A stretch of 40,652 bases of DNA. It comes from Octopus bimaculoides. Lineage: Eukaryota. The position numbers and the translations under genes are program-made. The stretch is from NCBI RefSeq assembly GCF_001194135.2, contig NC_069007.1, forward strand, positions 7,228,768 through 7,269,419, given 5' to 3'. The first letter of the stretch is position 1. Each line of letters begins with the position of its first letter. Shown here in pieces: positions 12,500-33,256 of this stretch. Under the pieces are notes generated by a model. That model did not search any database. It was not told the DNA's origin and was given only the letters and a program-made list of their open reading frames with translations.

Positions 12500-12640
12500 G
12501 CCCATTACTTGGTTTTGCTCCGAGGAGAAAACGAAATGACGAAACTAAGGGAGGTGACTCTAAATTGTTTATGTATTAAATGCGGAAATGGCGGCAAATG
12601 TCAGCTCAGCCTCGTGGTTCCGTCAAAAACACCAGGTAAA
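12500..12640 (+). promoter_or_regulatory. Probable ATR promoter / first-exon region
   Basis: Locally CpG-rich. CGGAAATGGCGGC at 12583-12595 overlaps an ETS-like CGGAA and a YY1-like AAATGGCGGC; candidate donor CAG|GTAAAC at 12635/12636. Confidence 0.5.
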
Positions 12641-12980
12641 CACTGAGTTAATATAAACTAAAAAAAACATTCTCTAAATAGGATCGTAATGTTGGGACAT
12701 CGGCAAAAATCTTAGCCGAGTACCTTTCAGAAGGAAAACGAACCTTGCTTTCATTTAATTTATTTATTTTGTCTTGTGTTGTCTTTCTGTTCAAATAAGA
12801 ATCTTTTGTTAATGATGTGATGTAGCTTTAAAAAGCCTTACGATGATTTCTTTTTAAATTATTGATGGAGGAAAATGAACAGTTCTTGATTAATTCTTCT
12901 CGATAGTCTTTTGAAAGAGTGATATAATAATAAATTCATACACACTCAACAGAAAGTGTCATATTTTCATTCTAATCGTC

Positions 12981-15900
12981 ATGGCATCTACTATGGATTT
13001 CAATCTGTTGTTAGAATTACTCAAGAAATACAAGACCACCAGCGACACAAGTCAATTGACACATGCCATGTTACATATTGGTCAGTCTCTCTATGATCTC
13101 GACTCGGTGGCCAAAAAACTTGCCGGCCCCACTGCATCTATGTGTCATTTCTTGCTGAAAATTACCTCAGACATCTTAGACGAGTTTAAATTTACCAAGA
13201 ACCAGCAGCCTAGCCAAGACTCACCTGACGAATGTGAAGCATTTATGTATTGGTTCACATCCCAGCTTCTCAGCCTCTTCACTCACCCCGGCTGCCACCA
13301 GCTCCATCCGAAATGTGTCACCTTGATTGTCCAGTTTCTTAATAGTTTGAAGATAAACGAACCTTACCTGTACCATAAAATCCTTGAGAAACTGGCCTGT
13401 TGTCTTAGTGAACTTGCAGTCTCTGAGTCTTCTGGATTGGAATCTACCGACGAAAATAAACCGATTGTTTTGAATCTTTTTAACGTAGATTTACGCCTGA
13501 TTTCTAATTTTTTACCTCCGTCTGAACAGAACACAGAAATACGCCAAGCTGTTATTAAACTGGGTTGTGAGTCATGTGAGATCCTGCAAGGCAATTTGAC
13601 GTTAGTGTTCTCACAACAGGTTAGATACTTAAATGGCGGGTGGAATACTCGACTGCTGTCTGTTTTGTGTCCCAGTCTTTTAGCCCAGATCGAATATGGA
13701 GACGTCCCATTGAAAGCTGCTTCGTTACAAGTTATTGAACAGTTGTTGCTTCTTCATGGCATACCGGAATTTGAGCAGTTGGAGTATCTTGTAGCAGTTC
13801 TGGTAGCGATTCCACCGATGATGTATGGAGACCAGGCAGAACTAACATCAAAAGAATTGTCTCTAATGGAGACGGCCTATGTTAAGACCCTTAATGCCCT
13901 ACTCAAAGCTGATTCTTCTGGTATTGGCAATCATTTAGACATAGCTAATTTGGACCTCATGTTAAACAAGTTTATAGAATTTATGAGTCTTTGTGGATGG
14001 CTTCAGAAGTTGCAGCAAGAACCATCTGCTGATATGTGTAGTGCTGTCAGCTCATTTCTCAACCATATTTTGACTAAGTTAAAGCAAATTCAAAATATAT
14101 TTGATTCAGTTTACAGCCCAGTTATTAACGTTTTAAAGGAGAAGCTATGTCATTTGCTTGGCAGGGTTTACAACAAAGAATTTTTGGTGCAGAACTTATG
14201 TTTGTTGGTGTCTTGGGAAATGGAATCCTCTTGTCTCAATGAAAATGATTTGTCTAAGGAAACTGAAGAACATCAGCCCAAAAAAGCTAAATTGCCATAT
14301 CTCCCTCATTTGAAAAGCAAAACCAGCAACAATAGCAGGAAAAAAATAACTCCAGAAGATAAATCAAAACTGTTCATGGAAATCAAGCGGAAGCTAGAAA
14401 TGTTCAAAGGAAAGTCACACAACGACAGCAGTGGGGTGTTGTGTATGTTAACTGGTGTACAGGTTATTGTGGAAGTATCAGTACTGTTATTCCATTCTTT
14501 CAAAGACAATCCTTTGCAGAAGAAAACTAAAGACGGTCAACCAAAAGTTTACAGTACTGACCAGAAATTCACAGAATGGCTCTCTAAAGAGGAATTAACA
14601 GAAATCTCTTATCTATGGAAGAATTTGTTTTCTCTTTGCACAAGTCTTCAGAATGCTGATGAATCTAAGGTCAAGGAACTTTTGAATTGTAGTCTTCAGG
14701 TAATTGCAAAATCTGTTGCTGCTTTGTTGATTGTGAAAGATTTCAGTGCTGCAGTGCCGGAATTGGTAAGTGAGTTTGTTGTGTTACTTTCTTTACCATG
14801 GCTTGCCAACAATGCTTCCTGGCTTGATCTACATTCAGCTGACCTGAAACCAATGTTGGAGATCAGTGGCCGATTGTCTCCGCTCTTAGATGACCTCACA
14901 TGCCAAATATGTATGGAAGTTTTGTGCTGGATCCCCAAATATATTGCTGGTCAGTGGCGTTGTCACATCTACAAATCAGTTTTAGCTAATAATTTAAGCC
15001 TTCCGTTGATACTGCAGGGAATTCGCTCCTCTGTTGTTTTATTACATACTCTTGGAGACAACTATGCTCACCTCATGACTGAGTTGATCTTGCCATTATT
15101 TAACATGAAGAATCCCACTGTTGACAACAGTTTGGCATCAGTGTTTGGTGAACTTGTTTGTGTTCTGTCAGGAGAGACTGAAATTTGCCAGAGTAATTCA
15201 TTTGACTCAAATGGTGGTGAAGTAAACATCTTTGACCTTTTCAAGTTGAAATGTAAGCAGTGTGATGATGCTAAGACAAGTCATAAGATGTTGGTCAGTC
15301 AGACCAAGTTGCCGATCATACAGGAGATGTTTGTTTGTTTTTCTGGTTACAAAGACATCAGTGATACAGCATATCGGACGGCTCTTGCACACAGTCTGCT
15401 TCGTGTCTATAACCACGTAGAGATAAAACTCACTGAACACTGGGCTCTTAACTTGCTAAATTACTCACTGCAATTAATTAATGATCCAGATTACGATATT
15501 TGCATTTTATTCAGCAACTGCTGTTGGCATCTGATCAAAGTCTCTGGTCTTGATGTTGCAAATATTGTCTTTGAGAAACTGAAGAATTCTTTGGCAGATT
15601 TAAAAGACACGAAAAGTGTGAAGCTACAGAAATCGATCCTGATGACAGTTGGGCTGCTTGGTAAATATTCAAGTGGTCCTCTTCTCTTGGACGTCACTCT
15701 GTTCCTTTTGGAAAACATAGTTTCTGATGTTCCTGTCTCCAGCGCTGTGGCCTACATGCAACTTCAGGGCATTTCAAGAGCTAAAAAAGCAGGTGAGAAA
15801 CCTTTTAATATATTTATGAATTACCAACAACCTATCTGTATGTTCCTGGTCAAGACAATGGATGAATCCTGTAAATTAAACATTGGTAAAACAGCTGAAC

Positions 15901-18900
15901 AGAAACTGAAAGAGGTCAGTAATGTGTTTGATTATGTGGACATCAGAGCCTTCATACATAGCACCGAGAGATTTCTACTTCCCCAATTGGTTGCTATGGC
16001 TTCCCCGACAGCATCATCTCTGATAAAGCTTCTTGCTACACTTTTACAAGTGCCAAGTCGCAAGAAGCTACTAATTTCTTCCACGAAATACATTTTTTCT
16101 TATCTCATTCGACATCACAATGAACAGGAAATTGCAAAAGCCCTCCAGTTCCATTTTGCCGAGACTGAAATTGAGCTAACTTACCTGCTTCGCATTGACT
16201 TCCAACGAGTCCATAACGAACTCCTGCTCTACCTGAGTACTAATTATGCTGAAGTCTTCAAAGGTTTACAGCGTCTCTGCTCCTATGATGATTTCTATCG
16301 TGGACAGATAGCCACGACAGAAGATATGGCCAACTATCTCCAACCTCGATTACTTGGAATTTTGGCTTTCTTCGATTCTCAATTATTGATATCTAGCATT
16401 CCAATTGAAGAGAAAAGACTCACGTTGGATAGTTTAAATTCCATCATCCAGCTAATGGGAGCAAAACACATCACTTTTGTGAGATACAAAATTATGAATA
16501 CACTCCGAATTAGTCTACGATTTGATGAGAAAGATTTCCTGGCAATAGCTTGTCAAGCGTGGAACTCGTTCATTCGAAGCGTGGAATTGCCAGCTCTGGG
16601 TGACATGTTGTCACCGATATCTGCCACTCTTTTACCGTTGATTCAACAACTTCCTGCACAATCTGCTGAGATCTTCAACTACCTCATCATCGAGAACAAA
16701 GACGCTTTGTGTAGTCACTTCCAAGAAATATATTTTTTACCCGACATTCCAGAATTGTCCAATGTGAATTATGTTTTGAAACAATATTCCAGTAGTCTTT
16801 CTAGCCAATCAGACTTAAGAACAAAGATAACTCATACGTTACGTGGTGTGACACACGAAAGCTTGGATGTCCAAATTCATGCTTTGTCAAATTTGAGGAA
16901 TTTACTTCACAGCAGTCAAAGACAACTGCATCAGTACATGCTTGACAACGAAACTGCAGATCCAATAGTATCGCAGTTGATCTCTGTGCTTTTGTCTGTT
17001 TGCAAAGTTCCGGATCACAGGGTTCGATGTCTGATTGGAGATTGTCTTGGAGAGATTGGTGCTATCGATCCTGGACGCCTCGAGTTGACGTCAAATAATC
17101 CAAAAGAAGAAATGGCCAAATTCCAAGCAAGTACTGAAGACGATAATTTTGCTATTGGAATTATAAATGAAATAATCCGTGCTTTTCTTGCAGCTACTGA
17201 AACGAGGGTGCAGGATTGTGCATCACTAGCTTTGCAAGATCTTTTGCAAATTTATAAAATAAGTGACAAACCTGAAGAAAATAACGAGCATGGTTCTGAA
17301 CGAAGACTTTGGAATCGTTTTCCAGAGCATGTCCAAGAAATATTACAACCTTTGCTTAATTCCAAGTATATTTCATCATCATCTTTTAGCTGGGATAATC
17401 TTCAGAAACCAATTTATGGCAGCATGAAGGGCAGCAAGTACAAGGAATGGATATGTATCTGGACCACTTATTTGTCTTCAAGAGTCCAGCAGAACCACCC
17501 ATTACGTGTGTTTCAAGTATGCAGTCCTATAACACGATATGATCCTTCAATTGCTTTATATATACTGCCACATGTTGTCACGCAAGTCTTGCTAGATGGC
17601 ACTGAAGGGGACATCCAAGACATCTATAATGAGATCATGGAAGTGTTGCACCAAATAAGGAAGTCGGACACTCGACAGGGTAGTGTAACTGATATGCGCC
17701 ACATGTGTGCCCAAACTATTTTCTCTGTTCTTGATTATTTATCGAAATGGAGGACAAACAGGGCACAGCTTAAGGTAGCTGAAATGCCTATATCTAAGGA
17801 ACCAGTGTATCTCAAAGACTCCAGTTACAGAACAGTAAATGCGTTCTTGAATCACATCCCACAAGATGTTCTTGCAGAAGCTTGCTTCAATTGCAATGCA
17901 TTCACACGTGCATTGATGCACTTTGAACATTTCATCAGAAACAACGATTGCAATATCCAACAACATCTCGATCTGTTGCAACGCATCTATGTTGCTTTAG
18001 ACGAACACGATGGCGTAGCAGGAGTTGCGGCCATTCGGCAAGCACAGCCGACCCTTGTGCAACAGATTTTAGCCCATCAGAGTATTGGCCAGTACCAAGA
18101 TGCGGAGGCTTGTTACGAAAGAGCTGTTCAGTTAGAACCTGAAGAAATCTCTCATCACCATGGTTGGCTGCGGAGTTTGATGGAATTGGGTCAGCTGAAC
18201 AAAGCTCTTCTTCATGCTGATGGCATCATTGCTAACCATCCTTCATGGAGCACACAACTGAACACCTATCGTGTTGAGGCCACATCTAAACTCGGAGATT
18301 GGAGCAAACTGGAATCTTATGTGAAGCTGGAGAAAGAAAGCAACGACTGGGTTGTGAGCTTGGGGAAAATTCTTTTGGCCATCAAGGACCGACACGAAGA
18401 GAGCTATCAGAAGCATATGAATAGTGCATGTATAGAAATAATGGGGCCGTTATCGGCAGCTAGCATGGAAAGTTTCTCATATCTTCGAGGTTATGAATAC
18501 ATTGTACGATTACATATGCTCAATGAGATTGAGCAGGCGAAAAAAATTATATTTGACTCCAAGACTCTGCTCAAACGGAGCAAAAGCAAGCAACAAAGTT
18601 CATCTGATTCTGTGAGCCTCGATGAACTCTTATTGCAGTGGGATGCACGTTCAAAGCTGATGCAGTCTCCTTTTCGCATCCAGGAACCTGTACTCACTTT
18701 ACGACGTACCCTCATCACACTGGAAAGCTGTTCCAATTGTTCCCCGCAGATAGGGAAATGGCTCCTCGATACAGCAACAGCTGCCCGTGAAGCCGGTTAT
18801 CTCCAAACAGCATATGGCTCCCTCATTCAAGCAGCTTCCTCCAATCTGCCTGAATATTGCCTGGAGAAAGCTAAATGGTTCTGGGAAAAGGGGCAGAATG

Positions 18901-20960
18901 ATCAAGCTCTCTCCTGCCTTGAAAAAGGCATGGCCGAGCATTTCCCTGATCTGAATCAACTGAAAAGAGACATGTCAAGGAGCTCCAAAAAAAAACTGTT
19001 CACCTATGCTCAGGCGCAGTTGTTGTACACACATTACTGCGACGAGACTTCCAACACGGATAGCAACACTGTACTGAAGCAGTATCGTGATGTCACAGAC
19101 TCATGTTCGGAATGGGAAGATGGCTACTTCTTCCTTGCTAAATACTATGACAAAATGAAGAACAACTTGATAGACGACAACGAAAACTCAGTGAAGCAAG
19201 GAGAGTTCAATATATTTGTTGTGAAGAATTACGGGACATCACTGCAGTACGGAAATCAATACATTTATCAATCTCTTCCAAGGCTTCTTAGTCTGTGGCT
19301 GGATTATGGTTCAACTGTTGTTCAGTCAGAGCTCCGTGACCAGACATCTAATCAAACATCGCACATACAAAAATTGCAGTCTCAGAAAACCATTCTGCAG
19401 AATTTGAATAAAGTGATCGAACAAATAAGTCGCAAACTGGCACCGTATCAACTCTTCACGGCTTTTTCACAGCTCATCTCTCGCATCTGTCATGCAAACT
19501 CAGACGTGTTTCGCCACCTGGTGAAAATAATTGCAAAACTACTGTATACATTCCCTGCTCAAGCTGTTTGGATGTTGATGGCTGTCTCAAAATCGTCCTA
19601 TCCAAAACGAGTAAAGAGATGCCAAGAGATATTCAACCAAGCGAAACTGATGAAGGAAGAACTTGGCAAGTTCTTACTCGATGCCAATAAACTTACAGAA
19701 CGTCTGCTGGAATTGTCTGAGCGCCACTGTCCAGACACTCAGCCTTTGAGTTTGTCCCTACACTTCAAGTCACTAAAACGTCTCCTTGATGACCCTAATT
19801 TCAGCAATATAATTGTCCCCTTGCAATCTTCAATGACGGTTACTTTACCCATGACGAAAACTGATAATAAAGTCGACCATGATCCTTTCCCGGGTGACAC
19901 TGTTTACATCAGCAGTTTTGAAGATACAATTGAGATCTTACCTTCATTACAGAAACCAAAGAAGATCACAATCAAAGGTAGTGATGGTCACCTGTATGTA
20001 ATGATGTGTAAACCAAAGGACGACTTGAGAAAGGATTGTCGTTTGATGGAGTTTACTACGATCGTCAACAAGTTCCTACGCAAAGACCCTGAGGCCAGAA
20101 AGCGACAGCTTCATATACGCACGTACACTGTGATTCCACTGAACGAAGAATGCGGCATCATAGAATGGGTGAACAACACAAGTGGTCTGCAGTATATATT
20201 ACGCAAATTGTACCGCGAAAAGGGGTTACAAATCAGTAATCGGGAGTTGAAGAATCACATCCCAGCTCTTCAGGCACCGCTTGAAAGGAAACTAGAACTG
20301 TTCAAAATGCTCCTTAATCTTCATCCCAGCGTGTTCTACGAATGGTTCCTGCGGACATTTCCAGACCCGACAGCTTGGTACAATTCTAGACTGGCATACG
20401 CCCGAACCTCTGCTGTGATGGACATGGTTGGGTATATCCTTGGACTTGGGGACAGACACGGTGAGAACATACTGATGGACTCCACAACCGGTGACTGTGT
20501 CCATGTCGATTTCAATTGTCTCTTCAATAAAGGGGAGACGTTCGAGTGGCCCGAGCGCGTACCATTCCGCTTGACCAACAACATGGTCAAAGCTATGGGA
20601 CCAATGGGATATGAAGGAATTTTCCGACAGGCATGTGAAGTGACCCTTAAAATACTACGGAACCAAATGGACCCTCTGATGAGTGTCCTAAAACCATTTA
20701 TTTATGACCCTCTTGTTGAGTGGCAGAAACTGACCAAGGGCCAAAGATCACACCAAGTCAGTTCTGGTGAGATTACCAATGAGCAAGCAATGACCCATGT
20801 CCAAATGATTGAGCATCGCATGAGAGGGATCCACGCATCAAAGACGAAACCAAGGGGCCTGCCCTTATCTGTTGAGGGTCAGGTCAACTATTTAATTCAT
20901 GAGGCAACCAATGAAAAACTCTTGTGCCAGATGTATATTGGATGGGCCCCATACTTGTAG
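12981..20960 (+). CDS. ATR: Serine/threonine kinase ATR (PIKK family), single-exon ORF of 2659 aa
   Basis: Uninterrupted ORF with N-terminal HEAT-like helical region, UME-like segment, FAT domain, kinase motifs MMCKPKDDLRKD (from 20001), GLGDRHGENIL (DRHGEN 20451-20468), HVDFNCLFNKG and PERVPFRLT, and FATC end LCQMYIGWAPYL. Length is close to human ATR (2644 aa). Confidence 0.97.
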   Translation: MASTMDFNLLLELLKKYKTTSDTSQLTHAMLHIGQSLYDLDSVAKKLAGPTASMCHFLLKITSDILDEFKFTKNQQPSQDSPDECEAFMYWFTSQLLSLFTHPGCHQLHPKCVTLIVQFLNSLKINEPYLYHKILEKLACCLSELAVSESSGLESTDENKPIVLNLFNVDLRLISNFLPPSEQNTEIRQAVIKLGCESCEILQGNLTLVFSQQVRYLNGGWNTRLLSVLCPSLLAQIEYGDVPLKAASLQVIEQLLLLHGIPEFEQLEYLVAVLVAIPPMMYGDQAELTSKELSLMETAYVKTLNALLKADSSGIGNHLDIANLDLMLNKFIEFMSLCGWLQKLQQEPSADMCSAVSSFLNHILTKLKQIQNIFDSVYSPVINVLKEKLCHLLGRVYNKEFLVQNLCLLVSWEMESSCLNENDLSKETEEHQPKKAKLPYLPHLKSKTSNNSRKKITPEDKSKLFMEIKRKLEMFKGKSHNDSSGVLCMLTGVQVIVEVSVLLFHSFKDNPLQKKTKDGQPKVYSTDQKFTEWLSKEELTEISYLWKNLFSLCTSLQNADESKVKELLNCSLQVIAKSVAALLIVKDFSAAVPELVSEFVVLLSLPWLANNASWLDLHSADLKPMLEISGRLSPLLDDLTCQICMEVLCWIPKYIAGQWRCHIYKSVLANNLSLPLILQGIRSSVVLLHTLGDNYAHLMTELILPLFNMKNPTVDNSLASVFGELVCVLSGETEICQSNSFDSNGGEVNIFDLFKLKCKQCDDAKTSHKMLVSQTKLPIIQEMFVCFSGYKDISDTAYRTALAHSLLRVYNHVEIKLTEHWALNLLNYSLQLINDPDYDICILFSNCCWHLIKVSGLDVANIVFEKLKNSLADLKDTKSVKLQKSILMTVGLLGKYSSGPLLLDVTLFLLENIVSDVPVSSAVAYMQLQGISRAKKAGEKPFNIFMNYQQPICMFLVKTMDESCKLNIGKTAEQKLKEVSNVFDYVDIRAFIHSTERFLLPQLVAMASPTASSLIKLLATLLQVPSRKKLLISSTKYIFSYLIRHHNEQEIAKALQFHFAETEIELTYLLRIDFQRVHNELLLYLSTNYAEVFKGLQRLCSYDDFYRGQIATTEDMANYLQPRLLGILAFFDSQLLISSIPIEEKRLTLDSLNSIIQLMGAKHITFVRYKIMNTLRISLRFDEKDFLAIACQAWNSFIRSVELPALGDMLSPISATLLPLIQQLPAQSAEIFNYLIIENKDALCSHFQEIYFLPDIPELSNVNYVLKQYSSSLSSQSDLRTKITHTLRGVTHESLDVQIHALSNLRNLLHSSQRQLHQYMLDNETADPIVSQLISVLLSVCKVPDHRVRCLIGDCLGEIGAIDPGRLELTSNNPKEEMAKFQASTEDDNFAIGIINEIIRAFLAATETRVQDCASLALQDLLQIYKISDKPEENNEHGSERRLWNRFPEHVQEILQPLLNSKYISSSSFSWDNLQKPIYGSMKGSKYKEWICIWTTYLSSRVQQNHPLRVFQVCSPITRYDPSIALYILPHVVTQVLLDGTEGDIQDIYNEIMEVLHQIRKSDTRQGSVTDMRHMCAQTIFSVLDYLSKWRTNRAQLKVAEMPISKEPVYLKDSSYRTVNAFLNHIPQDVLAEACFNCNAFTRALMHFEHFIRNNDCNIQQHLDLLQRIYVALDEHDGVAGVAAIRQAQPTLVQQILAHQSIGQYQDAEACYERAVQLEPEEISHHHGWLRSLMELGQLNKALLHADGIIANHPSWSTQLNTYRVEATSKLGDWSKLESYVKLEKESNDWVVSLGKILLAIKDRHEESYQKHMNSACIEIMGPLSAASMESFSYLRGYEYIVRLHMLNEIEQAKKIIFDSKTLLKRSKSKQQSSSDSVSLDELLLQWDARSKLMQSPFRIQEPVLTLRRTLITLESCSNCSPQIGKWLLDTATAAREAGYLQTAYGSLIQAASSNLPEYCLEKAKWFWEKGQNDQALSCLEKGMAEHFPDLNQLKRDMSRSSKKKLFTYAQAQLLYTHYCDETSNTDSNTVLKQYRDVTDSCSEWEDGYFFLAKYYDKMKNNLIDDNENSVKQGEFNIFVVKNYGTSLQYGNQYIYQSLPRLLSLWLDYGSTVVQSELRDQTSNQTSHIQKLQSQKTILQNLNKVIEQISRKLAPYQLFTAFSQLISRICHANSDVFRHLVKIIAKLLYTFPAQAVWMLMAVSKSSYPKRVKRCQEIFNQAKLMKEELGKFLLDANKLTERLLELSERHCPDTQPLSLSLHFKSLKRLLDDPNFSNIIVPLQSSMTVTLPMTKTDNKVDHDPFPGDTVYISSFEDTIEILPSLQKPKKITIKGSDGHLYVMMCKPKDDLRKDCRLMEFTTIVNKFLRKDPEARKRQLHIRTYTVIPLNEECGIIEWVNNTSGLQYILRKLYREKGLQISNRELKNHIPALQAPLERKLELFKMLLNLHPSVFYEWFLRTFPDPTAWYNSRLAYARTSAVMDMVGYILGLGDRHGENILMDSTTGDCVHVDFNCLFNKGETFEWPERVPFRLTNNMVKAMGPMGYEGIFRQACEVTLKILRNQMDPLMSVLKPFIYDPLVEWQKLTKGQRSHQVSSGEITNEQAMTHVQMIEHRMRGIHASKTKPRGLPLSVEGQVNYLIHEATNEKLLCQMYIGWAPYL

Positions 20961-21279
20961 AAAAACACTGGTTCTGCTCAAATTATTCTCCTTCCCAATA
21001 ATTGCAAAAGGGAAATTTATTAATGAATGAATATCCTCAACAAAAGTAATGAGATCTTCCACTGCATAATGAACTGTTCCATATGAAAAAAAGGACTTGT
21101 ATAAAAAAAAAAAAATTCCTTTCTGTTTCGCATACATGTATATACGTAAAACCACACTCAACAAGCACATGCAGACATACACACAGACTAATATACATAC
21201 AACTGTATACATATACATGTTCAGTGAGCACATACTAACATGCACAAATACAGACATGTATATGTGTGTGTATACATAT

Positions 21280-21311
<32 letters not shown>

Positions 21312-21581: not shown

Positions 21582-21615
<34 letters not shown>

Positions 21616-24767: not shown

Positions 24768-24860
24768 TCATTTAACAAATTGAGGTGGGGGTGAGAAGAA
24801 TCCGACTCCTTGTTTGTTAGCGACTCTCGAAGGGGCCAAACCAAGCAGCTTTTGGATGTT
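24768..24860 (-). CDS. TMCO1: TMCO1 exon 7 (terminal), NIQKLLGLAPSRVANKQGVGFFSPPPQFVK*
   Basis: aattacag| acceptor, phase 0; TGA at 24770-24768. The seven exons total 552 nt = 183 aa + stop with no frameshift. Confidence 0.95.
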   Translation of the reverse strand, partial: NIQKLLGLAPSRVANKQGVGFFSPPPQFVK

Positions 24861-25044
24861 CTGTAATTAACAACAGTAATTAGAAATAACAAATATTAAA
24901 ATGAAACAAAAAGTAACAACAAAAAGAAATAAATACATCATAGAAAGAATGACATAGAAAATGGTGGGGGTGAGGGGAAGGGGTAAATGCTCAGGGACGC
25001 CTTGCTGCATGAAAATGACCAGTGAAACGGGTACTAACATGACT

Positions 25045-25200
25045 GCAGGAGTGGCTGTGTGGTAAGAAGCTTGCTTCCCAACCACATGGTCCTGGGTTCA
25101 GTTCCACTGCGTGGCACCTTGGGCAAGTGCCAGCCTTGGGCCGACCAAAGCCTTGCGAGTGGATTTGGGAGACGGAAACAGAAAGAAGTCTGTTGTGTAT
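25045..25200 (+). mobile_element. SINE family A head only
   Basis: Same head as 7833; no tail. Confidence 0.85.
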
Positions 25201-25213
25201 ATGTGTGTGTTGT

Positions 25214-25590
25214 GGAGGTGCAATGGCCTAATGGTTAGGGCAGCGGACTCGCGGTCATAGGATCGCGGTTTCGATTCCCAGACCGGGCGTTGTGAGTGTT
25301 TATTGAGCGAAAACACCTAAAGCGCCACAAGGTTCCGGCAGGGGATGGTGGTGAACCCTGCTGTACTCTTCCACCACAACTTTCTCTCACTCTTACTTCC
25401 TGTTTCTGTTATGCCTGTAATTCAAAGGGTTGGCCTTGTCACACTCTGTGTCATGCTGAATATCCCCGAGAACTACGTTAAGGGTACACGTGTCTGTGGA
25501 GTGCTCAGCCACTTGCACGTTAATTTCACGAGCAGGCTGTTCCGTTGATCGGATCAACTGGAACCCTCGACGTCGTAAGCGACGGAGTGC
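25214..25590 (+). mobile_element. SINE family C
   Basis: A box tggcctaatggt, B box gtttcgattccc; high identity to the inverted copy at 27556-27925. Confidence 0.88.
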
Positions 25591-25878
25591 CAACAATTGA
25601 TTTCTGTCTTGACATGACAATGGTAATTGTAAACAAGTGTCACTGTCATATAAGCAGTGTCATTCACTTCCAATGCTCTGCAAAAACATGTCTGGGTACA
25701 GGGAAATATAAACTGGGATGGGAAACAGGCAAGGGCTGACCACAGAAAGGGCATTTGGCTGTAGAAAATCTGACTCAAAACTGTCTGATTCATGCAAGCA
25801 GGGAAAAGTGGATAATAAATGATGATGATGATGATGATGATGACAAATGCGAGTGTGTGAAGACGAAGGAGTTCTTAC

Positions 25879-26023
25879 CTGGCGTATAGACATTGTACAT
25901 AGAATGTAGAGGAAGATGAACGAGCAATGAGTGTAATCGTCTCCGGCTAGATTACGATGTGAAAGACCTTGCATCAGTGAAATTGGAGTAAATGGTAACT
26001 TAGCAACCACTCGGCCATCAAAA
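25879..26023 (-). CDS. TMCO1: TMCO1 exon 6 (145 nt), FDGRVVAKLPFTPISLMQGLSHRNLAGDDYTHCSFIFLYILCTMSIRQ
   Basis: aatctag| acceptor, CAG|gtaaga donor, phase 2-0; hallmark EMC3/TMCO1-family segment. Confidence 0.96.
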
Positions 26024-26128
26024 CTAGATTGTTTTCATTGGATAAGAATAAAATGAAAGGACAAGAAAAAAAAAAAAACAATAAAAATTAAGTCATGAAC
26101 AAATGAACAGTCATAACATTATTATTAA

Positions 26129-26390
26129 CCCTTTAAACATTCAGATTTCTGTCAAATGTAAAGCTTATTTATTCACATTGTTTCGGATTAATCATGCATT
26201 ATCTTGGAGGTTTGAGATTTTGATGATATGTTTGTTTATTTTTATAATGACATTGTAGTTTAGGTGTGAGAGGATGGATCTGGCCAGTTTGATCATAAAA
26301 CAGGTAGAATAAATGGGCCTGATATGGCTGATTTAACCCTTCAGTGTTCAGTTTATTCTGTTAGATATAATGCTTATTTACTTATTTGAA
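26129..26390. mobile_element. piggyBac-like MITE fragments; related inverted fragment at about 39030-39098
   Basis: TTAA|CCC start; cattcagatt...tgtcaaatgta...tttattcaca is shared in reverse complement with 39030-39098. Confidence 0.4.
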
Positions 26391-26595
26391 TGCTCTTCCT
26401 AACGCCAACCACTTTACAGTGTGTACTGGGTGCTTTTAGCGTGCCACCGGCATGAGCGCTTTTTGTGGGGCACCAGCATGGGTGTTTTTTATGTGGTATT
26501 GACATAGGATTCTTGTAGGATCCTCTTCACCAGGGAATGCGATCTTAACACTTTAACTGTGGAGAATAGGTTTTCTTGAGTACAGCAAGGGGCCA

Positions 26596-26634
<39 letters not shown>

Positions 26635-26980
26635 GTGCACTCCGTCGGTTATGACGATGAGGGTCTCAGCTGATATGATCAATGGAACAGCTTGCTCATG
26701 AAGTTAACATGTTAGTGGCTGAGCACTCCACAGACATGTGTACCCTTAACGTAGTTCTCAGGGAGATTCAGCATAAATTAGAATGTGACAAGGCTGGCCC
26801 TTTGAAATACAGGTGCTACACATTTTTGCCAGCTGAGTAGACTGAAGCAATGTGAAATAAAGTGTCTTGCTCAAGGACACAACGCATCACTGGGAATCGA
26901 ACTCACGACTTTACGATTGTGAGCCGAATGCCCTAACCACTAAGCCATGTGGCTTCAAAAAAGAAAAAAAAAATATATAC

Positions 26981-27032
<52 letters not shown>

Positions 27033-27555
27033 TATGTCTGTTATCTCATCACCAATAATGTCATGATGATGTTGGGGTGTGCACAAGGGCATAGGAACAG
27101 TGCTGAGACCCCCTTCGGTCATGACTGACTATGGGATTGCATCAAGAAAGTTACCCTCCTAGACACAAGTCCAGGCAAGGTTGTTTATGGAAGACCAGCA
27201 GTCGCCCATTCATACCGGTCTCCCCTCTCCACACCACTCGTGTTATCCAAGGGAAAGGCAAAGAAGCCGATACAGCTTGGCACCAGTGACGTCACAACTC
27301 ATTTCCACAGCTGAGTGAACTGGAGCAACGTGAAATAAAGTGTCTTGCTCAAGAACACAACAGACACCCTGATCAGGGATTTGAACTCACAACCTCACGA
27401 TCGTTAGCTCGATGCTCTAACCACTGAGCCATGCGCCTTCATATAGGAATAGTATTACCCAAATAAATATTTGGATATGGTTATCTAGAATAACCATATG
27501 CAGAATTAATATGTTCATGCAGAACATAATCCGTACTACACCATACATTGTGTGT

Positions 27556-27925
27556 TGGCACTCCGTTGAGAATTCCAGTTGATCCGATCAACGGAACAGC
27601 CTGCTCGTGAAATTAACGTGCAAGTGGCTGAGCACTCCACAGACACGTGTACCCTTAACGTAGTTCTCGGGGGATATTCAGCGTGACACAGTGTGACAAG
27701 GCTGACCCTTTGAATTACAGGCACAACAGAAACAGGAAGTAAAGATTGAGAGAAAGGTGTGGTGAAAGAGTACAGCACGGTTCGCCACCATCCCCTGACG
27801 GAGCCTCGTGGAGCTTTAGGTGTTTTCGCTCAATAAACACTCACAACGCCCGGTCTGGGAATCGAAACTGCGATCCTATGACCGCGAGTCCGCTGCCCTA
27901 ACCACTGGGCCATTGCGCCTCCACT
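27556..27925 (-). mobile_element. SINE family C, inverted (partial 3' copy also at about 26635-26810)
   Basis: Reverse complement of 25214-25590. Confidence 0.88.
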
Positions 27926-28139
27926 ACACCAAACGTAAGTACGATATTAAACTAACACAACAATCCAATATGAACGATCAATGCTGTCAACTGCTGACAG
28001 TTCACACAGTTGCTTCATTTTATTGATATGTGTCAGTCCACTTTTGGTCACATAGGGGTGGTCAGGATCCCTCCACAACAATATATATAGACAGACATAT
28101 AGATAGAAGGAGCAAACAAGAGATATCCAAAATACTTAC

Positions 28140-28207
28140 ATGGAGTTGAACATACTCAAAAGTGCAGTGAAAGCAAAACCAATTGCAAACATGGATTTCA
28201 TTTTAAC
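28140..28207 (-). CDS. TMCO1: TMCO1 exon 5 (68 nt), VKMKSMFAIGFAFTALLSMFNS(I)
   Basis: ttacag| acceptor, |gtaagt donor, phase 0-2. Confidence 0.95.
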
Positions 28208-28231
28208 CTGTAATAAATAAATAAACAAATA

Positions 28232-28465
28232 CCATAAATCCTTGAGTATAGTCTGCCCTTGAGTATAATACGCAGGGGATTTTTAGGGGGCTGTACCTCT
28301 GAAAAACCTAAACCTTGTGTATAATACGCACCCCTTCTCTAACTTGAGTCAAGGAGGTCTATATAACGTCCTTAGTTTGTAAACGTATATACGGTAACGT
28401 CCTTTATTATTATTGTATATATAACATAATGCAAACGTGTAGCTTTTTTGTTCACTTTGTTTGCA
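28232..28465. mobile_element. Truncated inverted copy of the pogo-like MITE in TMCO1 intron 4
   Basis: Reverse-complement match to about 39360-39598, starting ta|ccataaatc and cut by a SINE. Confidence 0.8.
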
Positions 28466-28833
28466 GTGTGGTAAGTAGCTTGCTTATGAACCACATGGTT
28501 CTGGGTTCAGTCCCACTGTGTGGCACCTTGGGCAAGTGTCTTCTACCATAGCCTCGGGCCGACCAAAGCCTTGCGAGTGGATTTGGTAGACGGAAACTGA
28601 AAGAAGCCCGTCGTATATATGTATATGTATGTGCGTGTGTATGTTTGTGTGTCTGTGTTTGTCCCCCCAACATCACTTGACAACCGACGCTGGTCTGTTT
28701 AGGTCCCCGTAACTTAGCGGTTTGGCAAAAGGTACCGATAAAATAAGTACTAGGCTTACAAAGAATAAGTCCTAGGGTCGATTTGCTCGACTAAAGGCGG
28801 TGCTCCAGCATGGCCACAGTTAAATGACTGAAA
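28466..28833 (+). mobile_element. SINE family A
   Basis: Head, linker and tail as in other copies. Confidence 0.9.
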
Positions 28834-28841
28834 CATACATA

Positions 28842-29008
28842 TACGATGGGCTTCTTCCAGTTTCCATCTACCAAATCCACTCACAAGGTTTTGGTCGGCT
28901 TGAGGCTATAGTAGAAGACACCTGCCCAAGGTGCCACGCAGTGGGACTGAACCCGGGACCATGTGGTTAGTAAGCAAGCTACTTACCACACAGCCACTCC
29001 TGCACCTA
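28842..29008 (-). mobile_element. SINE family A head only, inverted
   Basis: Reverse complement of the family A head. Confidence 0.88.
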
Positions 29009-29216
29009 CAAGCTGCTGATTATCCTAGTAAACGAGATCCAGGAATGCTTCCATCAATGGAAACAGTGCTGGATTAAGTATGTGGCTTCCCGAAGGGAAG
29101 GAAACTGAATGCCAAATAGGTATGTGTTGTAGTTTTGTTTTTATTGCACCAGTCCAAATACTTATTGGATCAGACCCCATATACATATGGATTTGTAAAG
29201 TAATCAATAAACTCAC

Positions 29217-29263
29217 CAATGATAAATCTCGACTGTTGTTTTTCAATTTCTCTTCTTGGCGCT
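29217..29263 (-). CDS. TMCO1: TMCO1 exon 4 (47 nt), (E)RQEEKLKNNSRDLSL
   Basis: ccctttcag| acceptor, |gtgagt donor, phase 1-0; human ERQEEKLKNNNRDLSM. Confidence 0.95.
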
Positions 29264-30262
29264 CTGAAAGGGAAACAAAAGAAACAGAGTATGAGGGAGG
29301 GAGAGTGTGAGCGGGAGATTGGACAAATATGTCTGTCGACTGCAGGATACAATTCTTTTATTGTTCTGTTTCTTCAACTCAAAATCGTTTGGAATCATCA
29401 GGACACATCTTACACCATGCACATCAATCTAGACAATAACCTTCCCAAGATGCCAAATGAATCTGAAGAGATTTTAGAAATTGTTTCCACTTATTCTTAT
29501 AAACAACAACAACAACAATCCTTTCTATTATAGGCACAAGGGCTTGAAATTGTTGTGGAAGGGGCTAGTCAATTACATTGACCCCAGTACTTAACTGGTA
29601 CATATTTTATCGACTCCAAAAGGATGAAAGGCAAAGTTGACCTCGGCGGAATTTGAACTCAGAACGTAGTAGCAGACGAAATACCGCTAAGGATTTCGCC
29701 TGGCGTGCTAACGAACCCTTTGTGCTATAGGCACAAGGCCTGAAATTTGGTGGAAGGGGACTAGTCAATTACATTGACCCCAGTGCGTAACTGGTACTTA
29801 ATTTATCGACCCCAAAAGGATGACAGGCAAAGTCCACCTTGGTGGAATTGGAACTCAAAATGTGAAGATGGACGAAATAGCTCTAACCATTTTACTCATA
29901 TTAATAATAATAATAATAATAATAATTAGGGTTTCAAATTTTAGCTTAAGTCTAGCAATTTTGGGGGTAAGAGTTATGTTGATTACATTGCTAACGTTTC
30001 TGCTACCTAGGGACCTTGCTAATGATAATGATTTTTAAGATATTCACAAAAGCGACAAATTTTGAAGAGAAGGATACAGTTACCTTAATTAGTATTCTGT
30101 TTTATTGAAAGAGGAATGATGAAAAGTTGAGGTAATTACCTGCTGGGATTGAACTCAGAATGTAAGGGCAAATAACTCAGTATTGCAAAACATTTTTTGT
30201 CAGTTGCCTTCCTCATTCTCACACACACACACAGAAAACGGTGTGACTTGTCCCAGACTTAC

Positions 30263-30322
30263 CTAACTTTTTCTTCTGGTTTCGATCAGCTACGTCCATT
30301 CCGGCTTCTCTTTGCTTCTCCA
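30263..30322 (-). CDS. TMCO1: TMCO1 exon 3 (60 nt), (L)EKQREAGMDVADRNQKKKL
   Basis: ttttcag| acceptor, |gtaagt donor, phase 1-1; coiled-coil segment in frame with exons 2 and 4. Confidence 0.92.
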
Positions 30323-30356
30323 CTGAAAAAAAAACAAAACAAACAAATAATAATAT

Positions 30357-30495
30357 AGGCGTAGGAGTGGCTGTGTGGTAAGTAGCTCGCTTACTAACCA
30401 CATGGTTCCGGGTTCAGTTCCACTGCGAGGCACCTTGGGCAAGTGCCTTCTACTGAGTGGATTTGGTAGACGGAAACTGAAAGAAGCTCGTCGTA

Positions 30496-30540
<45 letters not shown>

Positions 30541-30752
30541 TTATATATGTTTGTGTGTCTGTGTTTGTCCCCCAACATCGCTTGACAACTGATGTTGGTG
30601 TGTTTACATTCCCGTAACTTAGTGGTTCGGCAAAAGAGACCGATAGAATAAGTACTAGGCTTCCAAAGAATAAGTCCTGGGGTTGATTTGCTTGACTAAA
30701 GGCGGTGCTCCAGCATGGCCGCAGTCAAATGACTGAAACAAGTAAAAGAGTA
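30357..30752 (+). mobile_element. SINE family A
   Basis: Head, linker and tail. Confidence 0.9.
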
Positions 30753-30759
30753 TCAGGTA

Positions 30760-31115
30760 GTGGTACTGAATGTGATCGATGCCAGGGCCACTTGACTGGC
30801 TCCTGTGCCGGTGGCACATAAAAAGCACCATCTGAATGTAGTCAATGCCAGGTGTGCTTAACTGGCTCCCGTGCTGGTGGCACGTAAAAGCACAATCCAA
30901 ACATGGCCAATGCCAGTACCCACTGACTGGCTCCTGTGCCAGTGGCATGTAAAAAGCACCTACTATACTCTCGGAGTGGTTGGCGTTAGGAAGTGCATCC
31001 AGCTGTAGAAACATTGCCTGGTGCAACCTCCTGGCTTCCCAGACCGCAGTCGAACCATCCAACCCATGCGAGCATGGAAAACGGATGTTAAACGATGATG
31101 ATGATGATGATGATA
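30760..31115 (+). mobile_element. Retroposon 3' end (family E) with (GAT)n tail; related pieces at about 25590-25845 (+), 6175-6335 (-) and 26370-26480 (-)
   Basis: Shared ggcgttaggaagNgcatccagctgtagaaac ... catggaaaacggatgttaaacgatgatgat. Confidence 0.7.
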
Positions 31116-31127
31116 TCTCCTACTTAC

Positions 31128-31205
31128 ATTTTTTACTTTGTTTTTCTACTTCAGATTTCAATTTCTTGTATTTATCTGTTCTGTAAACCATGAGCCATGT
31201 TAAAC
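31128..31205 (-). CDS. TMCO1: TMCO1 exon 2 (78 nt), (G)LTWLMVYRTDKYKKLKSEVEKQSKK
   Basis: ttacag| acceptor, |gtaagt donor, phase 1-1; near-identical to the recalled human segment. Confidence 0.95.
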
Positions 31206-32033
31206 CTGTAACAAACAGAAAAAAAAAACCCCCTTAATTACCATCATCATTAACGAGGGAGAAAGGCCTATATGCTGTTGCTTGATCGCTTAGGGATTAC
31301 GACCAAATTTTACCTTAAATCACACACAAATGACTTTAAAAAAAAGATAAAGGTATCGATGTAGCTGTGTGGTATGCAGTTTGAGTCCTGGAGTCAATGG
31401 TATCAGCTAGCCCCTCCCCTCATAATTGCTAGTTTTGTGTCTAAATCAGAATCCTTTTAGACAAAACTATGTGCTCAGAGCATGGTTACATGGTTAAGAA
31501 ACTTTGTTTGCAACCGTGTGGTTTCAAGTTCAGTCCCACTTCACAAGACTTTGGGCAAGTCTACTATAGCTGTGGGCTGACCGATGCCCTGTGAGTGAAT
31601 TTGGTAGAAGGAAACTGTGTGGAAGTCCATCATGTATGTATGTATGTGTGTGTCTTTCTCTCTTCCAGCATCGTGTGACAACCGGTGTTGGTTTGTTTAC
31701 ATCCACATAACAAACGAGTTTAGCAAGAGACCAATAGCATAAGTACTGAGGTTGATTTGACAGTGCCCCAGTATGGCCATAGTCTAATGACTGAAACAAT
31801 TAAAAGAACCTTCCCCCCAAATAGTACTTCATAAAACATAGTATCAGTCAAGTAATGGGGCCCATGATGCCGATAAAGTTCTCCCCTCAAAACTGCTGGC
31901 CTTGGGGTTAAATTAGAACCCATTCATACAAACTATGTACATAGAAGCATATGACCGCAGTTTCTTGTAGTCCGAGAAAGACGGTGCCGCAATTTCTTGC
32001 CGAACGACCTATAGAAATGATTTGTTTATAATA

Positions 32034-32198
32034 GGAGGTGTAGGAGTGGATGTGTGGTAAGTAGCTTGCTTACCAACCACATGGTTCTGGGTTCAGTCCC
32101 ACTGCATGGCACCTTGGGCAAGTGTCTTTTACTGTAGCCTCGGGCCGACCAAAGCCTTGTGAACGGATTTGGTAGACGGAAACTGAAAAAACCCCGTC

Positions 32199-32233
<35 letters not shown>

Positions 32234-32425
32234 CGTATGTGTGTGTGTATATGTTTATGTGTCTGTGTTTGTTCCCCCAATATCACTTGACAACCGATGC
32301 TGGTCTCCGTCACTTAGCGGTTCGGCAAAAGACACCGATAGAATAAGTACTAGGCTTCCAAAGAATAAGTCCTGGGGTCGATTTGCTCGTCTAAAGGCGG
32401 TGCTGAAACAAGTGAAAGAGTAAGT
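32034..32425 (+). mobile_element. SINE family A (older diverged copy also at about 31476-31800)
   Basis: Head, linker and tail. Confidence 0.88.
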
Positions 32426-32885: not shown

Positions 32886-33049
32886 TTGTGTGTGTGTGTG
32901 TGTATATATATATACGTGTGTGTGTGTGTATATATATGTGTGTGTGTGTGTGTATATATATACATGTGTGTGTATGTATATATATATATGTATGTGTGCG
33001 CGCGTGTATATATATAATGTAGGTGTGTCTGAATATCTGTGTGTGTATG

Positions 33050-33087
<38 letters not shown>

Positions 33088-33240: not shown

Positions 33241-33256
33241 CATCTACTCGACCTAC

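What the first reader, a model, noticed from the sequence alone, without database searches (positions are those of the whole stretch)
12981..20960. Intronless, intact 8-kb ATR: probable functional retrogene
Seen: 7980 bp with no intron, stop or frameshift and all PIKK motifs intact, while the neighbouring 552-bp TMCO1 CDS has six introns. Known: vertebrate ATR has over 40 exons, and retrocopies are usually 5'-truncated and much shorter. Inference: a full-length mRNA was retroposed (or all introns were lost via cDNA recombination) and kept under purifying selection, possibly replacing the parental gene for an essential checkpoint kinase.
Basis: partly seen in the sequence, partly recalled or inferred. 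Interest (0 to 1): 0.82.

Follow-up and report, generated by a model that had tools for sequence, protein, structure and literature searches.

The report
Intronless ATR gene shared by coleoid cephalopods
Octopus carries its essential 8-kb DNA-damage checkpoint kinase gene ATR as one uninterrupted exon; the same holds in argonaut and cuttlefish-type genomes but not in limpet, mussel or clam, so every intron was stripped out once, via a cDNA, before octopuses and squids/cuttlefish diverged.

Summary
Window 12981-20960 (+) is one ATG-to-stop ORF of 2659 codons encoding a complete ATR (N-HEAT, UME, M-HEAT, FAT, kinase, FATC). The window is Octopus bimaculoides, and TMCO1 lies downstream, convergent and multi-exon.

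ATR is equally intronless in O. sinensis, a third Octopus, Argonauta hians, Acanthosepion pharaonis and an unnamed decapodiform. In Patella, Mytilus and Tegillarca the last ~720 codons are split into at least 17 exons. Twelve intron positions and phases are shared between gastropod and bivalve, and one is also shared with Daphnia. The intronless state is therefore derived and arose once, at or before the coleoid crown. It is not a recent octopus retrocopy.

dN/dS is 0.066 and 0.080 in two lineage pairs, so the gene is functional. No second cephalopod ATR was detected.

Still unresolved: whether a retrogene at a new locus replaced its parent, or a full-length cDNA converted the gene in place. 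Synteny is uninformative, and no poly(A) remnant or target-site duplication survives. Nautilus could not be examined.

This is a new member of a known kind (retrogene replacement or wholesale intron loss), notable for its 8-kb size and essential function.

The parts
12981..20960 (+). Single-exon coding sequence of ATR (2659 codons plus stop): N-HEAT, UME, M-HEAT, FAT, PI3/PI4-kinase and FATC domains
   Evidence: ORF; translation; Pfam; human ATR E=0; colinear and uninterrupted in six other coleoid loci; dN/dS 0.066 and 0.080
12545..12625 (+). Conserved ~80-bp upstream element (AAGGGAGGTGACTCTAAAT...GGAAATGGCGGCAAATG...), a candidate core promoter or transcription-start region of ATR. The function is inferred.
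   Evidence: 88-90% three-way identity among three Octopus species against about 50-65% around it. Recognisable in Argonauta (L001 8870-8905). The AWATGGCGG motif lies 385-395 nt upstream of the ATG in two Octopus species and decapodiform L002, and 533 nt upstream in Sepia. The motif occurs only twice in the window against 0.2 expected. The 5' ends of five independent Sepia-type contigs fall at this element.
12626..12980 (+). Leader between the conserved element and the ATG, probably 5'UTR. It contains a donor-like CAG|GTAAAC at about 12636, but the candidate acceptor at about 12952 is not conserved.
   Evidence: Alignment of three Octopus species: CAACAG reads CAACGG in O. sinensis. The interval is about 985 nt and rich in microsatellites in Argonauta. 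The Sepia-type contig is colinear with the A. pharaonis genome through this region.
20961..21145 (+). Proximal 3' flank (3'UTR-like), colinear between Octopus species, with an A13 run about 143 nt after the stop. The A run is not a demonstrable poly(A) relic.
   Evidence: Colinear with L003/L004 up to 21145 and with O. sinensis up to 21311. A-runs are present in Octopus only, not in Argonauta or decapodiforms; no target-site duplication.
24783..33317 (-). Neighbouring multi-exon TMCO1 gene, convergent with ATR. It serves as an internal control showing that this genome region keeps ordinary introns.
   Evidence: tblastn pieces at 33317-33228, 31203-31129, about 29264, 28207-28139, 26028-25879 and about 24900-24783; annotated EMC3_TMCO1 gene in O. 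bimaculoides and O. sinensis.

Best explanation
This is the one working ATR gene of Octopus bimaculoides. Its product is the replication-stress and DNA-damage checkpoint kinase, and it is encoded by a single exon.

The ancestral mollusc ATR was densely interrupted, at roughly one intron per 45 codons in the region examined. On the cephalopod stem, before Octopodiformes and Decapodiformes split, a full-length spliced ATR mRNA was reverse-transcribed. The resulting cDNA became the only ATR gene. That happened either (a) by insertion at a new site followed by loss of the intron-bearing parent (retrogene replacement), or (b) by recombination with the resident gene, erasing all introns in place.

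The intron-free gene has been kept under strong purifying selection in every coleoid lineage examined. It is probably transcribed from a conserved promoter-like element about 0.4 kb upstream of the ATG as one roughly 9-kb unspliced mRNA.

Shown: the intronless state in seven coleoid loci, the derived polarity, and purifying selection.
Inferred: the cDNA intermediate, a single origin, sole-copy status, and the promoter assignment.
I rate (a) and (b) as about equally likely, with (a) slightly favoured.
For: 1. Uninterrupted full-length ATR ORF in O. bimaculoides, O. sinensis, a third Octopus, Argonauta hians (gene span 7884 bp = 2627x3+3; colinear alignment), an unnamed decapodiform on a 58.6-kb genomic contig (7938 bp = 2645x3+3) and the Acanthosepion pharaonis genome (single tblastn block covering aa 3-2659).
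2. Outgroups: Patella, Mytilus and Tegillarca spread the last 320-395 codons over 10-15 kb. At least 17 exons cover octopus aa 1937-2659 in Patella. Intron positions and phases 2317/0, 2347/0, 2383/0, 2435/2, 2466/2, 2518/0, 2603/0 and 2641/0 are identical in all three species. Positions 2012/0, 2145/0, 2182/0 and 2540/0 are shared by Patella and Tegillarca. Position 2603/0 is also in Daphnia.
3. dN/dS is 0.066 (Octopus pair, dS 0.37) and 0.080 (decapodiform pair, dS 0.78), lowest over FAT-kinase-FATC at 0.016-0.05. Synonymous sites are saturated between orders.
4. The exhaustive 1.84-billion-representative search finds one coleoid ATR cluster, then nothing above 56% identity; the named ones among the next-best clusters are a hemichordate, a sea urchin, fishes, a lamprey and a scorpion. 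The annotated Octopus and Argonauta proteomes give one ATR each.
5. A shared upstream element across coleoids argues for one orthologous locus and one event.
6. An RT source is plausible. Retrotransposition-competent LINEs are reported in Octopus (PMC9115989), and a LINE ORF2 (Exo_endo_phos plus RVT_1) lies 3.5 kb upstream of ATR in the decapodiform contig.
7. Retrogene replacement of a multi-exon parent has precedent, for example amphioxus SYCP1 (PMC5803294).
Against: - No poly(A) relic or target-site duplication. The only word shared by the two flanks is a homopolymer A run.
- No outgroup neighbour could be matched to any cephalopod neighbour, and the outgroups do not match each other either. 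A change of locus is therefore not demonstrated.
- Neighbours differ even among coleoids: lectin and TMCO1 in Octopus, NUP43 in Argonauta, and none of these within 10 kb in A. pharaonis.
- Absence of a second ATR rests on annotated proteins and clustered databases, not on a whole-genome translated search.
- Expression was not directly shown; run metadata for the transcript-like contigs could not be retrieved.
- Nautilus was not available, so the event is only bracketed between the split from the gastropod/bivalve lineage and the coleoid crown.
Confidence: 0.85

Rival explanations
1. Retrogene replacement in the strict sense. The ATR mRNA was retroposed to a new chromosomal site in a stem cephalopod and captured a resident housekeeping promoter, possibly a bidirectional one. 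The multi-exon parental gene was then lost.
For: All examined ancestral introns are gone at once, and none remains in the CDS. Cephalopod neighbours (TMCO1, lectin, NUP43) do not match the Mytilus neighbour (PDCD9/MRPS30) or the Patella neighbour. In Argonauta the ATR upstream element lies about 600 bp from the start of divergently transcribed NUP43. That resembles the promoter co-option described for the amphioxus SYCP1 retrogene (PMC5803294). LINE reverse transcriptases are active in octopus.
Against: No poly(A) tail or target-site duplication. The NUP43 adjacency is not found within 10-13 kb in two Octopus species or two decapodiforms, so it may be secondary. The outgroup loci share no neighbours with each other, so no 'ancestral locus' is defined. 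Coleoid genomes are known to be heavily rearranged (own knowledge), so non-synteny is weak evidence. A retrocopy of an essential gene must reproduce full expression before the parent can be lost.
Confidence: 0.45
2. In-place wholesale intron loss. A full-length ATR cDNA recombined with the resident gene (RT-mediated gene conversion) and removed every coding intron, while the gene kept its original promoter and position.
For: This route keeps an essential gene functional and correctly regulated throughout, so fixation is easy. The precise, in-frame removal of all introns is what cDNA conversion produces. Daphnia ATR shows that the same gene can lose long runs of adjacent introns in place: it has exons of 2263, 1451 and 1886 nt. 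The conserved upstream element could be the original promoter.
Against: Complete loss of what is probably 40 or more introns over 8 kb in a single conversion tract is exceptional. Neighbouring genes such as TMCO1 kept their introns, so there is no general intron-loss tendency at this locus. No synteny with outgroups was found to support 'same place'.
Confidence: 0.38
3. Additional retrocopy. The single-exon gene is a functional duplicate, and a canonical multi-exon ATR still exists elsewhere in cephalopod genomes but was missed.
For: Whole-genome translated searches could not be run. Long multi-exon genes are often fragmented or missed in cephalopod annotations, for example the truncated 1637-aa model in A. 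pharaonis and the 42-codon-short start in Argonauta.
Against: Neither the word-index searches nor the exhaustive representative search returns a second cephalopod-like ATR or fragment. After the coleoid cluster, identity falls to 56% or less; the named next-best clusters are non-molluscan and two are unnamed. The kinase-domain search returned many short fragment models from other molluscs but none from a cephalopod. dN/dS of 0.02-0.05 across FAT-kinase-FATC over hundreds of millions of years is what a sole essential copy would show.
Confidence: 0.05
4. Artefact. A processed cDNA or transcript was mis-incorporated into the assembly, or it is a recently inserted processed pseudogene that happens to be intact.
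For: The O. bimaculoides scaffold contains many N gaps around the gene.
Against: The ORF and its non-coding flanks are colinear in the gap-free O. sinensis assembly, in a 5.4-Mb Argonauta contig, in a long-read-style 58.6-kb contig and in the A. pharaonis genome. Strong purifying selection excludes a pseudogene.
Confidence: 0.01

Closest known systems
Retrogene replacement / 'orphan' retrogenes (e.g. amphioxus SYCP1; the human orphan retrogenes of Ciomborowska et al. 2013)
   Same: A gene that is multi-exonic in related lineages is represented by one single-coding-exon gene. No parental copy is detectable, the ORF is intact and conserved across a whole clade, and there may be use of a neighbour's promoter (PMC5803294; PMC3548309 listed).
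   Different: A change of locus, which defines those cases, could not be shown here. The coding exon is about 8.0 kb, against about 3.2 kb for AmphiSYCP1. The gene is an essential housekeeping checkpoint kinase, not a meiosis or testis gene. The event is old enough that all insertion hallmarks are gone.
Reverse-transcriptase-mediated intron loss by cDNA recombination (the model for intron-poor genes of yeasts; runs of adjacent intron losses in animals)
   Same: Introns are removed exactly and in frame, many adjacent introns are lost together, and the gene stays functional. Daphnia ATR shows the partial version in the same gene.
   Different: Here the loss is total across 2659 codons, in a lineage whose neighbouring genes remain intron-rich. 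The typical cases lose a subset of introns, often 3'-biased.
ATR/Mec1/Rad3 orthologues of other eukaryotes (human ATR, PDB 5YZ0-type structures; yeast MEC1)
   Same: Same domain order and catalytic motifs, with end-to-end alignment to human ATR. ATR genes of intron-poor organisms such as budding yeast MEC1 are also intronless (own knowledge).
   Different: Those intronless ATRs sit in genomes that have lost most introns. Coleoid genomes are intron-rich, and other mollusc ATR genes keep dense, ancient introns. Human ATR has 47 exons (own knowledge, not tested here).

Membership tests
ATR (PIKK family checkpoint kinase) orthologue | Domain order N-HEAT, UME, M-HEAT, FAT, PI3/PI4-kinase, FATC | tested here: met
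   All seven Pfam families are above their gathering scores and in the canonical order.
ATR (PIKK family checkpoint kinase) orthologue | Closer to ATR than to the other PIKKs (ATM, mTOR, SMG1, DNA-PKcs) | tested here: met
   Human ATR scores 1881 bits over residues 42-2659. MEC1 scores 434 bits, ATM 241 and mTOR 221.
ATR (PIKK family checkpoint kinase) orthologue | Catalytic residues intact (ATP-binding Lys, catalytic loop DRHxxN, DFN metal-binding motif, FATC terminus) | tested here: met
   MMCKPKDD, GDRHGENIL and VDFNCLF are present, and the protein ends in the FATC domain. These columns are invariant in the five-species alignment.
Retrogene / retrogene replacement | Lacks the introns present in the parental or ancestral gene | tested here: met
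   There are zero introns in the CDS. Sixteen mapped ancestral positions in the last 720 codons are all absent.
Retrogene / retrogene replacement | Lies at a locus different from that of the parental gene | tested here: inconclusive
   No shared neighbours between cephalopod and outgroup loci within 10 kb, and none between the outgroups themselves either. Only 10-kb flanks were available.
Retrogene / retrogene replacement | 3' poly(A) tract and flanking target-site duplications | tested here: not met
   The only shared flank word is a homopolymer A run. A-runs after the stop codon occur in Octopus only. After more than 200 My these marks would be expected to have decayed (inference), so their absence has little weight.
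Retrogene / retrogene replacement | Parental multi-exon copy absent from the genome (orphan status) | tested here: inconclusive
   One ATR per annotated cephalopod proteome and one coleoid cluster in the exhaustive search. Whole-genome TBLASTN was not possible with these tools.
Retrogene / retrogene replacement | Functional: intact ORF under purifying selection | tested here: met
   dN/dS is 0.066 and 0.080, and 0.016-0.05 over the catalytic half.
Retrogene / retrogene replacement | Transcribed | not testable with these tools
   Indirect evidence only. RefSeq-type models equal the uninterrupted ORF. Five near-identical ~9-kb Sepia-type contigs have ends clustered like a transcript. Run metadata were not retrievable.
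In-place RT-mediated intron loss | Gene remains at the ancestral, syntenic position with its ancestral promoter | tested here: inconclusive
   Same synteny limits as above. The 5' ends of the outgroup ATR genes were not available, so their promoters could not be compared.
In-place RT-mediated intron loss | Exact, frame-preserving deletion of introns | tested here: met
   The octopus protein aligns across every mapped outgroup intron position without an insertion or frame change.

The most novel reading that the evidence does not exclude
Coleoid ATR is a true retrogene replacement, and with an 8-kb coding exon it would be the longest known for an essential housekeeping gene. In this reading the retrocopy was captured by a resident housekeeping promoter at the base of the coleoids, and it may be one visible member of a burst of retro-replacements that accompanied the transposon expansion and genome reorganisation of that lineage.
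Probability: 0.2. Interest if true: 0.62.

Novelty: new member of a known kind. Interest (0 to 1): 0.45.

Why it matters
ATR is essential for replication-stress signalling, and in intron-rich animals it is a large, densely interrupted gene. A clade-wide single-exon ATR shows that an 8-kb mRNA can be reverse-transcribed in full and take over an indispensable function. It also gives a clean, datable genomic character for cephalopod phylogeny: if Nautilus retains the introns, the loss is a coleoid synapomorphy.

The gene is a natural experiment on what introns contribute to the expression of a long housekeeping gene, including splicing-dependent export, nonsense-mediated decay surveillance and alternative isoforms. 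This is of particular interest in animals that rely heavily on RNA editing, many of whose editing sites use exon-intron pairing (own knowledge).

Practically, it gives annotators a check. The A. pharaonis and Argonauta ATR gene models are truncated and can be corrected to the full single exon.

Tried and rejected
1. Synteny by blastn and by translated-ORF tblastn. I compared window flanks with Argonauta and decapodiform loci, and outgroup flanks with each other and with the cephalopods. Only interspersed repeats matched, so the test is uninformative at 10-kb flanks.
2. Transcript evidence for UTR splicing from Logan contigs. The Octopus-type contigs L003 and L004 are colinear with the genome and end in microsatellites, so they may be genomic. 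The Sepia-type contigs are colinear with the A. pharaonis genome end to end. SRA and ERZ accessions occur in no searchable paper.
3. A 5'UTR intron model (donor about 12636, acceptor about 12952). I set it aside because the acceptor AG is not conserved in O. sinensis.
4. NUP43-ATR bidirectional promoter as a shared coleoid feature. It is true in Argonauta, but the NUP43 first exon is absent within 10-13 kb in two Octopus species and two decapodiforms.
5. Poly(A) and target-site-duplication search: nothing beyond low-complexity A runs.
6. Full-length and profile word-index searches did not return non-cephalopod mollusc ATRs. The kinase-only query did.
7. The chimpanzee partial ATR could not be located for vertebrate intron positions.
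8. No Nautilus sequence was recovered. The best non-coleoid representatives that carry a name are a hemichordate, a sea urchin, fishes, a lamprey and a scorpion; two others (P0159, P0162) are unnamed.
9. Literature searches for cephalopod retrogenes, intron loss or an intronless ATR found no prior report.
Full report
**1. What is in the sequence**

By my own arithmetic from the base composition, a stop-free run of that length has a chance probability of about 1e-79.

- The product has the complete ATR architecture in canonical order: N-HEAT_ATR, UME, M-HEAT_ATR, FAT, HEAT_ATR, PI3_PI4_kinase and FATC.
- It aligns to human ATR over residues 42-2659 with E=0, far ahead of MEC1, ATM, mTOR, SMG1 and DNA-PKcs.
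- The ATP-binding lysine (MMCKPKDD), the catalytic loop (DRHGEN) and the DFN motif are present. They are invariant in a five-species alignment.

Exact-sequence look-up places the window in Octopus bimaculoides (GCA_001194135.2, scaffold CM046627.1, about 7.23 Mb). A C-type lectin gene lies upstream on the same strand, and TMCO1 lies downstream on the opposite strand. TMCO1 is split into at least six coding pieces between about 33317 and 24783. The 'low-GC' tracts and several long 'ORFs' are runs of N.

**2. It is not an artefact and not specific to this octopus**

The same uninterrupted ORF occurs in six further coleoid loci:

- Octopus sinensis, in a gap-free assembly. The neighbours are the same (Lectin_C, ATR, TMCO1), and nucleotide identity is 92.8% through the ORF and both flanks.
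- A third Octopus-like species, from two independent Logan contigs.
- Argonauta hians, on a 5.4-Mb contig. The gene span of 7884 bp equals 2627 codons plus the stop, and it aligns colinearly with the window. The real start is 42 codons upstream of the annotated one.
- A 58.6-kb genomic contig of an unnamed decapodiform. The span of 7938 bp equals 2645 codons plus the stop. It is 84% identical to cuttlefish sequences.
- The Acanthosepion pharaonis genome. Octopus residues 3-2659 align in a single tblastn block, and the annotated 1637-aa model is simply truncated.

ATR is thus a single coding exon on both sides of the deepest split among living coleoids.

**3. Polarity: the intronless state is derived**

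A kinase-domain query recovered annotated genomic fragments of ATR from a limpet (Patella vulgata), a mussel (Mytilus edulis) and an ark clam (Tegillarca granosa). In these species the last 320-395 codons occupy 10.5, 13.4 and 14.7 kb.

Mapping the octopus protein onto these loci shows at least 17 exons for octopus residues 1937-2659 in Patella. Exact GT-AG reconstruction gives intron positions and phases in octopus coordinates:

- 2317/0, 2347/0, 2383/0, 2435/2, 2466/2, 2518/0, 2603/0 and 2641/0 are identical in all three species.
- 2012/0, 2145/0, 2182/0 and 2540/0 are shared by Patella and Tegillarca.

Daphnia magna ATR has about 11-12 short introns. One of them, at 2603 phase 0, coincides exactly with the molluscan one, so that intron predates the mollusc-arthropod split.

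The cephalopod lineage has therefore lost at least the 16 positions mapped in Patella. At the observed density of one intron per roughly 45 codons, the total is probably 40 or more (extrapolation).

**4. Function and age**

- Nei-Gojobori dN/dS is 0.066 between two Octopus species (dS 0.37).
- It is 0.080 between the two decapodiforms (dS 0.78).
- It falls to 0.016-0.05 over the FAT, kinase and FATC half.
- Synonymous sites are saturated between Octopus, Argonauta and the decapodiforms.

The single-exon gene has therefore been an indispensable gene for the whole history of crown coleoids. That is a few hundred million years (own knowledge of cephalopod divergence dates, not tested here).

**5. 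Is it the only ATR?**

- The word-index searches return one ATR cluster for Octopus, one for Argonauta and one for cuttlefish.
- An exhaustive HMMER scan of 1.84 billion cluster representatives, using the C-terminal 1200 residues, finds one coleoid cluster (87% identity). Identity then drops directly to 56% or less; the named ones among the next-best clusters are a hemichordate, a sea urchin, fishes, a lamprey and a scorpion, and two are unnamed.
- The kinase query returned fragmentary multi-exon models from several other molluscs but none from a cephalopod.

This points to a sole copy. It is not a substitute for a translated search of whole genomes, which these tools do not allow.

**6. How it is probably expressed**

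Upstream of the ATG, the most conserved non-coding stretch is an ~80-bp element at 12545-12625 (AAGGGAGGTGACTCTAAAT...GGAAATGGCGGCAAATG).

- It shows 88-90% three-way identity among three Octopus species, against about 50-65% around it.
- It is recognisable in Argonauta.
- Its AAATGGCGG core lies 385-395 nt upstream of the ATG in two Octopus species and the decapodiform contig, and 533 nt upstream in the Sepia-type contigs.
- That 9-mer occurs twice in the window against 0.2 expected.
- It resembles a YY1-type core-promoter motif (own knowledge; inference).
- Five independent ~9-kb Sepia-type contigs begin at this element and are colinear with the A. pharaonis genome from end to end.

If those contigs are transcripts, the whole transcription unit is unspliced, UTRs included.

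A donor-like CAG|GTAAAC follows the element in Octopus. The candidate acceptor near the ATG is not conserved in O. sinensis, so I do not propose a 5'UTR intron.

**7. Mechanism, and what remains open**

Precise removal of every intron requires a spliced-mRNA-derived cDNA. There are two routes:

- Retroposition to a new site followed by loss of the parent (retrogene replacement, as in amphioxus SYCP1; PMC5803294).
- Conversion of the resident gene by a full-length cDNA.

I could not separate them. No poly(A) relic or target-site duplication survives, which is expected at this age. Flanking genes within 10 kb share nothing between cephalopods and outgroups, or between the outgroups themselves.

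Neighbours also differ within coleoids:

- Octopus has lectin upstream and TMCO1 downstream.
- Argonauta has NUP43 head-to-head, about 600 bp from the ATR upstream element.
- A. pharaonis has none of these within 10 kb.
- The NUP43 first exon is absent upstream of ATR in Octopus.

The Argonauta arrangement is reminiscent of promoter co-option, but it is not shown to be ancestral. Daphnia ATR, with exons of 2263, 1451 and 1886 nt, shows that in-place loss of runs of introns does happen in this gene. Reverse-transcriptase sources are plentiful: competent LINEs are reported in Octopus (PMC9115989), and a LINE ORF2 lies upstream of ATR in the decapodiform contig.

I put retrogene replacement at about 0.45 and in-place conversion at about 0.38. 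An undetected parental copy gets about 0.05.

**8. Comparison with what is known, and novelty**

The gene is an ordinary ATR by every membership criterion tested. Its gene structure belongs to a known class: orphan retrogene, retrogene replacement, or RT-mediated wholesale intron loss.

Three things make it unusual:

- the size of the single exon, 8.0 kb against 3.2 kb for AmphiSYCP1;
- the essential, ubiquitous function of the gene;
- the intron-rich genomic background.

Five literature searches, plus term searches inside the Sepia officinalis genome paper and the octopus LINE paper, found no report of it. Any genome browser would show the single exon, so I treat it as unreported rather than unknown.

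I rate it a new member of a known kind, with interest 0.45. It is a solid and tidy evolutionary-genomics observation with a clear follow-up (Nautilus, macrosynteny, a genome-wide screen). It is not a new type of system.

Noticed in passing
window 4360-4530, 7843-8013, 25051-25202, 28466-28630, 28835-28997 (-), 30367-30510, 32046-32216, 33731-33899, 38168-38338: A ~170-bp interspersed repeat (SINE-like) with at least nine copies in the window at 78-86% identity. It mostly lies in TMCO1 introns and the upstream intergenic region. Its ~95-bp core is also present in several copies in the Argonauta locus (L001 813-882, 6231-6288, 20642-20752), so the family predates the Octopus-Argonauta split.
   Followed up: partly
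window 22139-23194 (-), interrupted by an N gap at 22375-22932: Fragment of a mariner/Mos1-type DNA transposon about 1.2 kb downstream of the ATR stop. The minus-strand ORF hits Pfam HTH_48 (the HTH domain of Mos1 transposase) with E=1.8e-23.
   Followed up: partly
window 26882-26954 (-): A tRNA-like sequence inside a TMCO1 intron, just above the Rfam tRNA gathering score (31 against 29 bits). ARAGORN does not call it. It is probably a tRNA-derived repeat or pseudogene.
   Followed up: no
L001 (Argonauta hians) 9875-10000 and L016 (Acanthosepion pharaonis) 6989-10000: The public ATR gene models are truncated at the 5' end. The Argonauta ORF really starts 42 codons upstream (MASATDLNVLLELLKKYK). 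The A. pharaonis model of 1637 aa omits about 1000 N-terminal codons that are contiguous in the genome.
   Followed up: yes
L001 7996-8334 (-) and upstream: In Argonauta the gene upstream of ATR is nucleoporin NUP43 (E=6e-11 to the human NUP43 N-terminus), transcribed divergently. Its start lies about 600 bp from the conserved ATR upstream element, so the two may share a bidirectional promoter. This is not seen in Octopus or the decapodiforms within 10-13 kb.
   Followed up: partly
L002 1139-6546 (+): An apparently intact LINE (a 641-aa ORF1 followed by a 1158-aa ORF2 with endonuclease and reverse-transcriptase domains) lies 3.5 kb upstream of ATR in the decapodiform contig.
   Followed up: no
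P0162/P0315 (ENA metagenome contigs of 14-16 kb): An unidentified eukaryote in ENA metagenome assemblies encodes a 2688-aa ATR, 51% identical to the octopus C-terminal half, on contigs too short to hold many introns. This may be another independently intron-poor or intronless ATR.
   Followed up: no
window 21130-21730 and many other places; L001 9160-9250: Dense (TA)n, (CA)n and (CATA)n microsatellites flank ATR on both sides and coincide with the assembly gaps. They are also where the Logan contigs of the sister Octopus species terminate.
   Followed up: no
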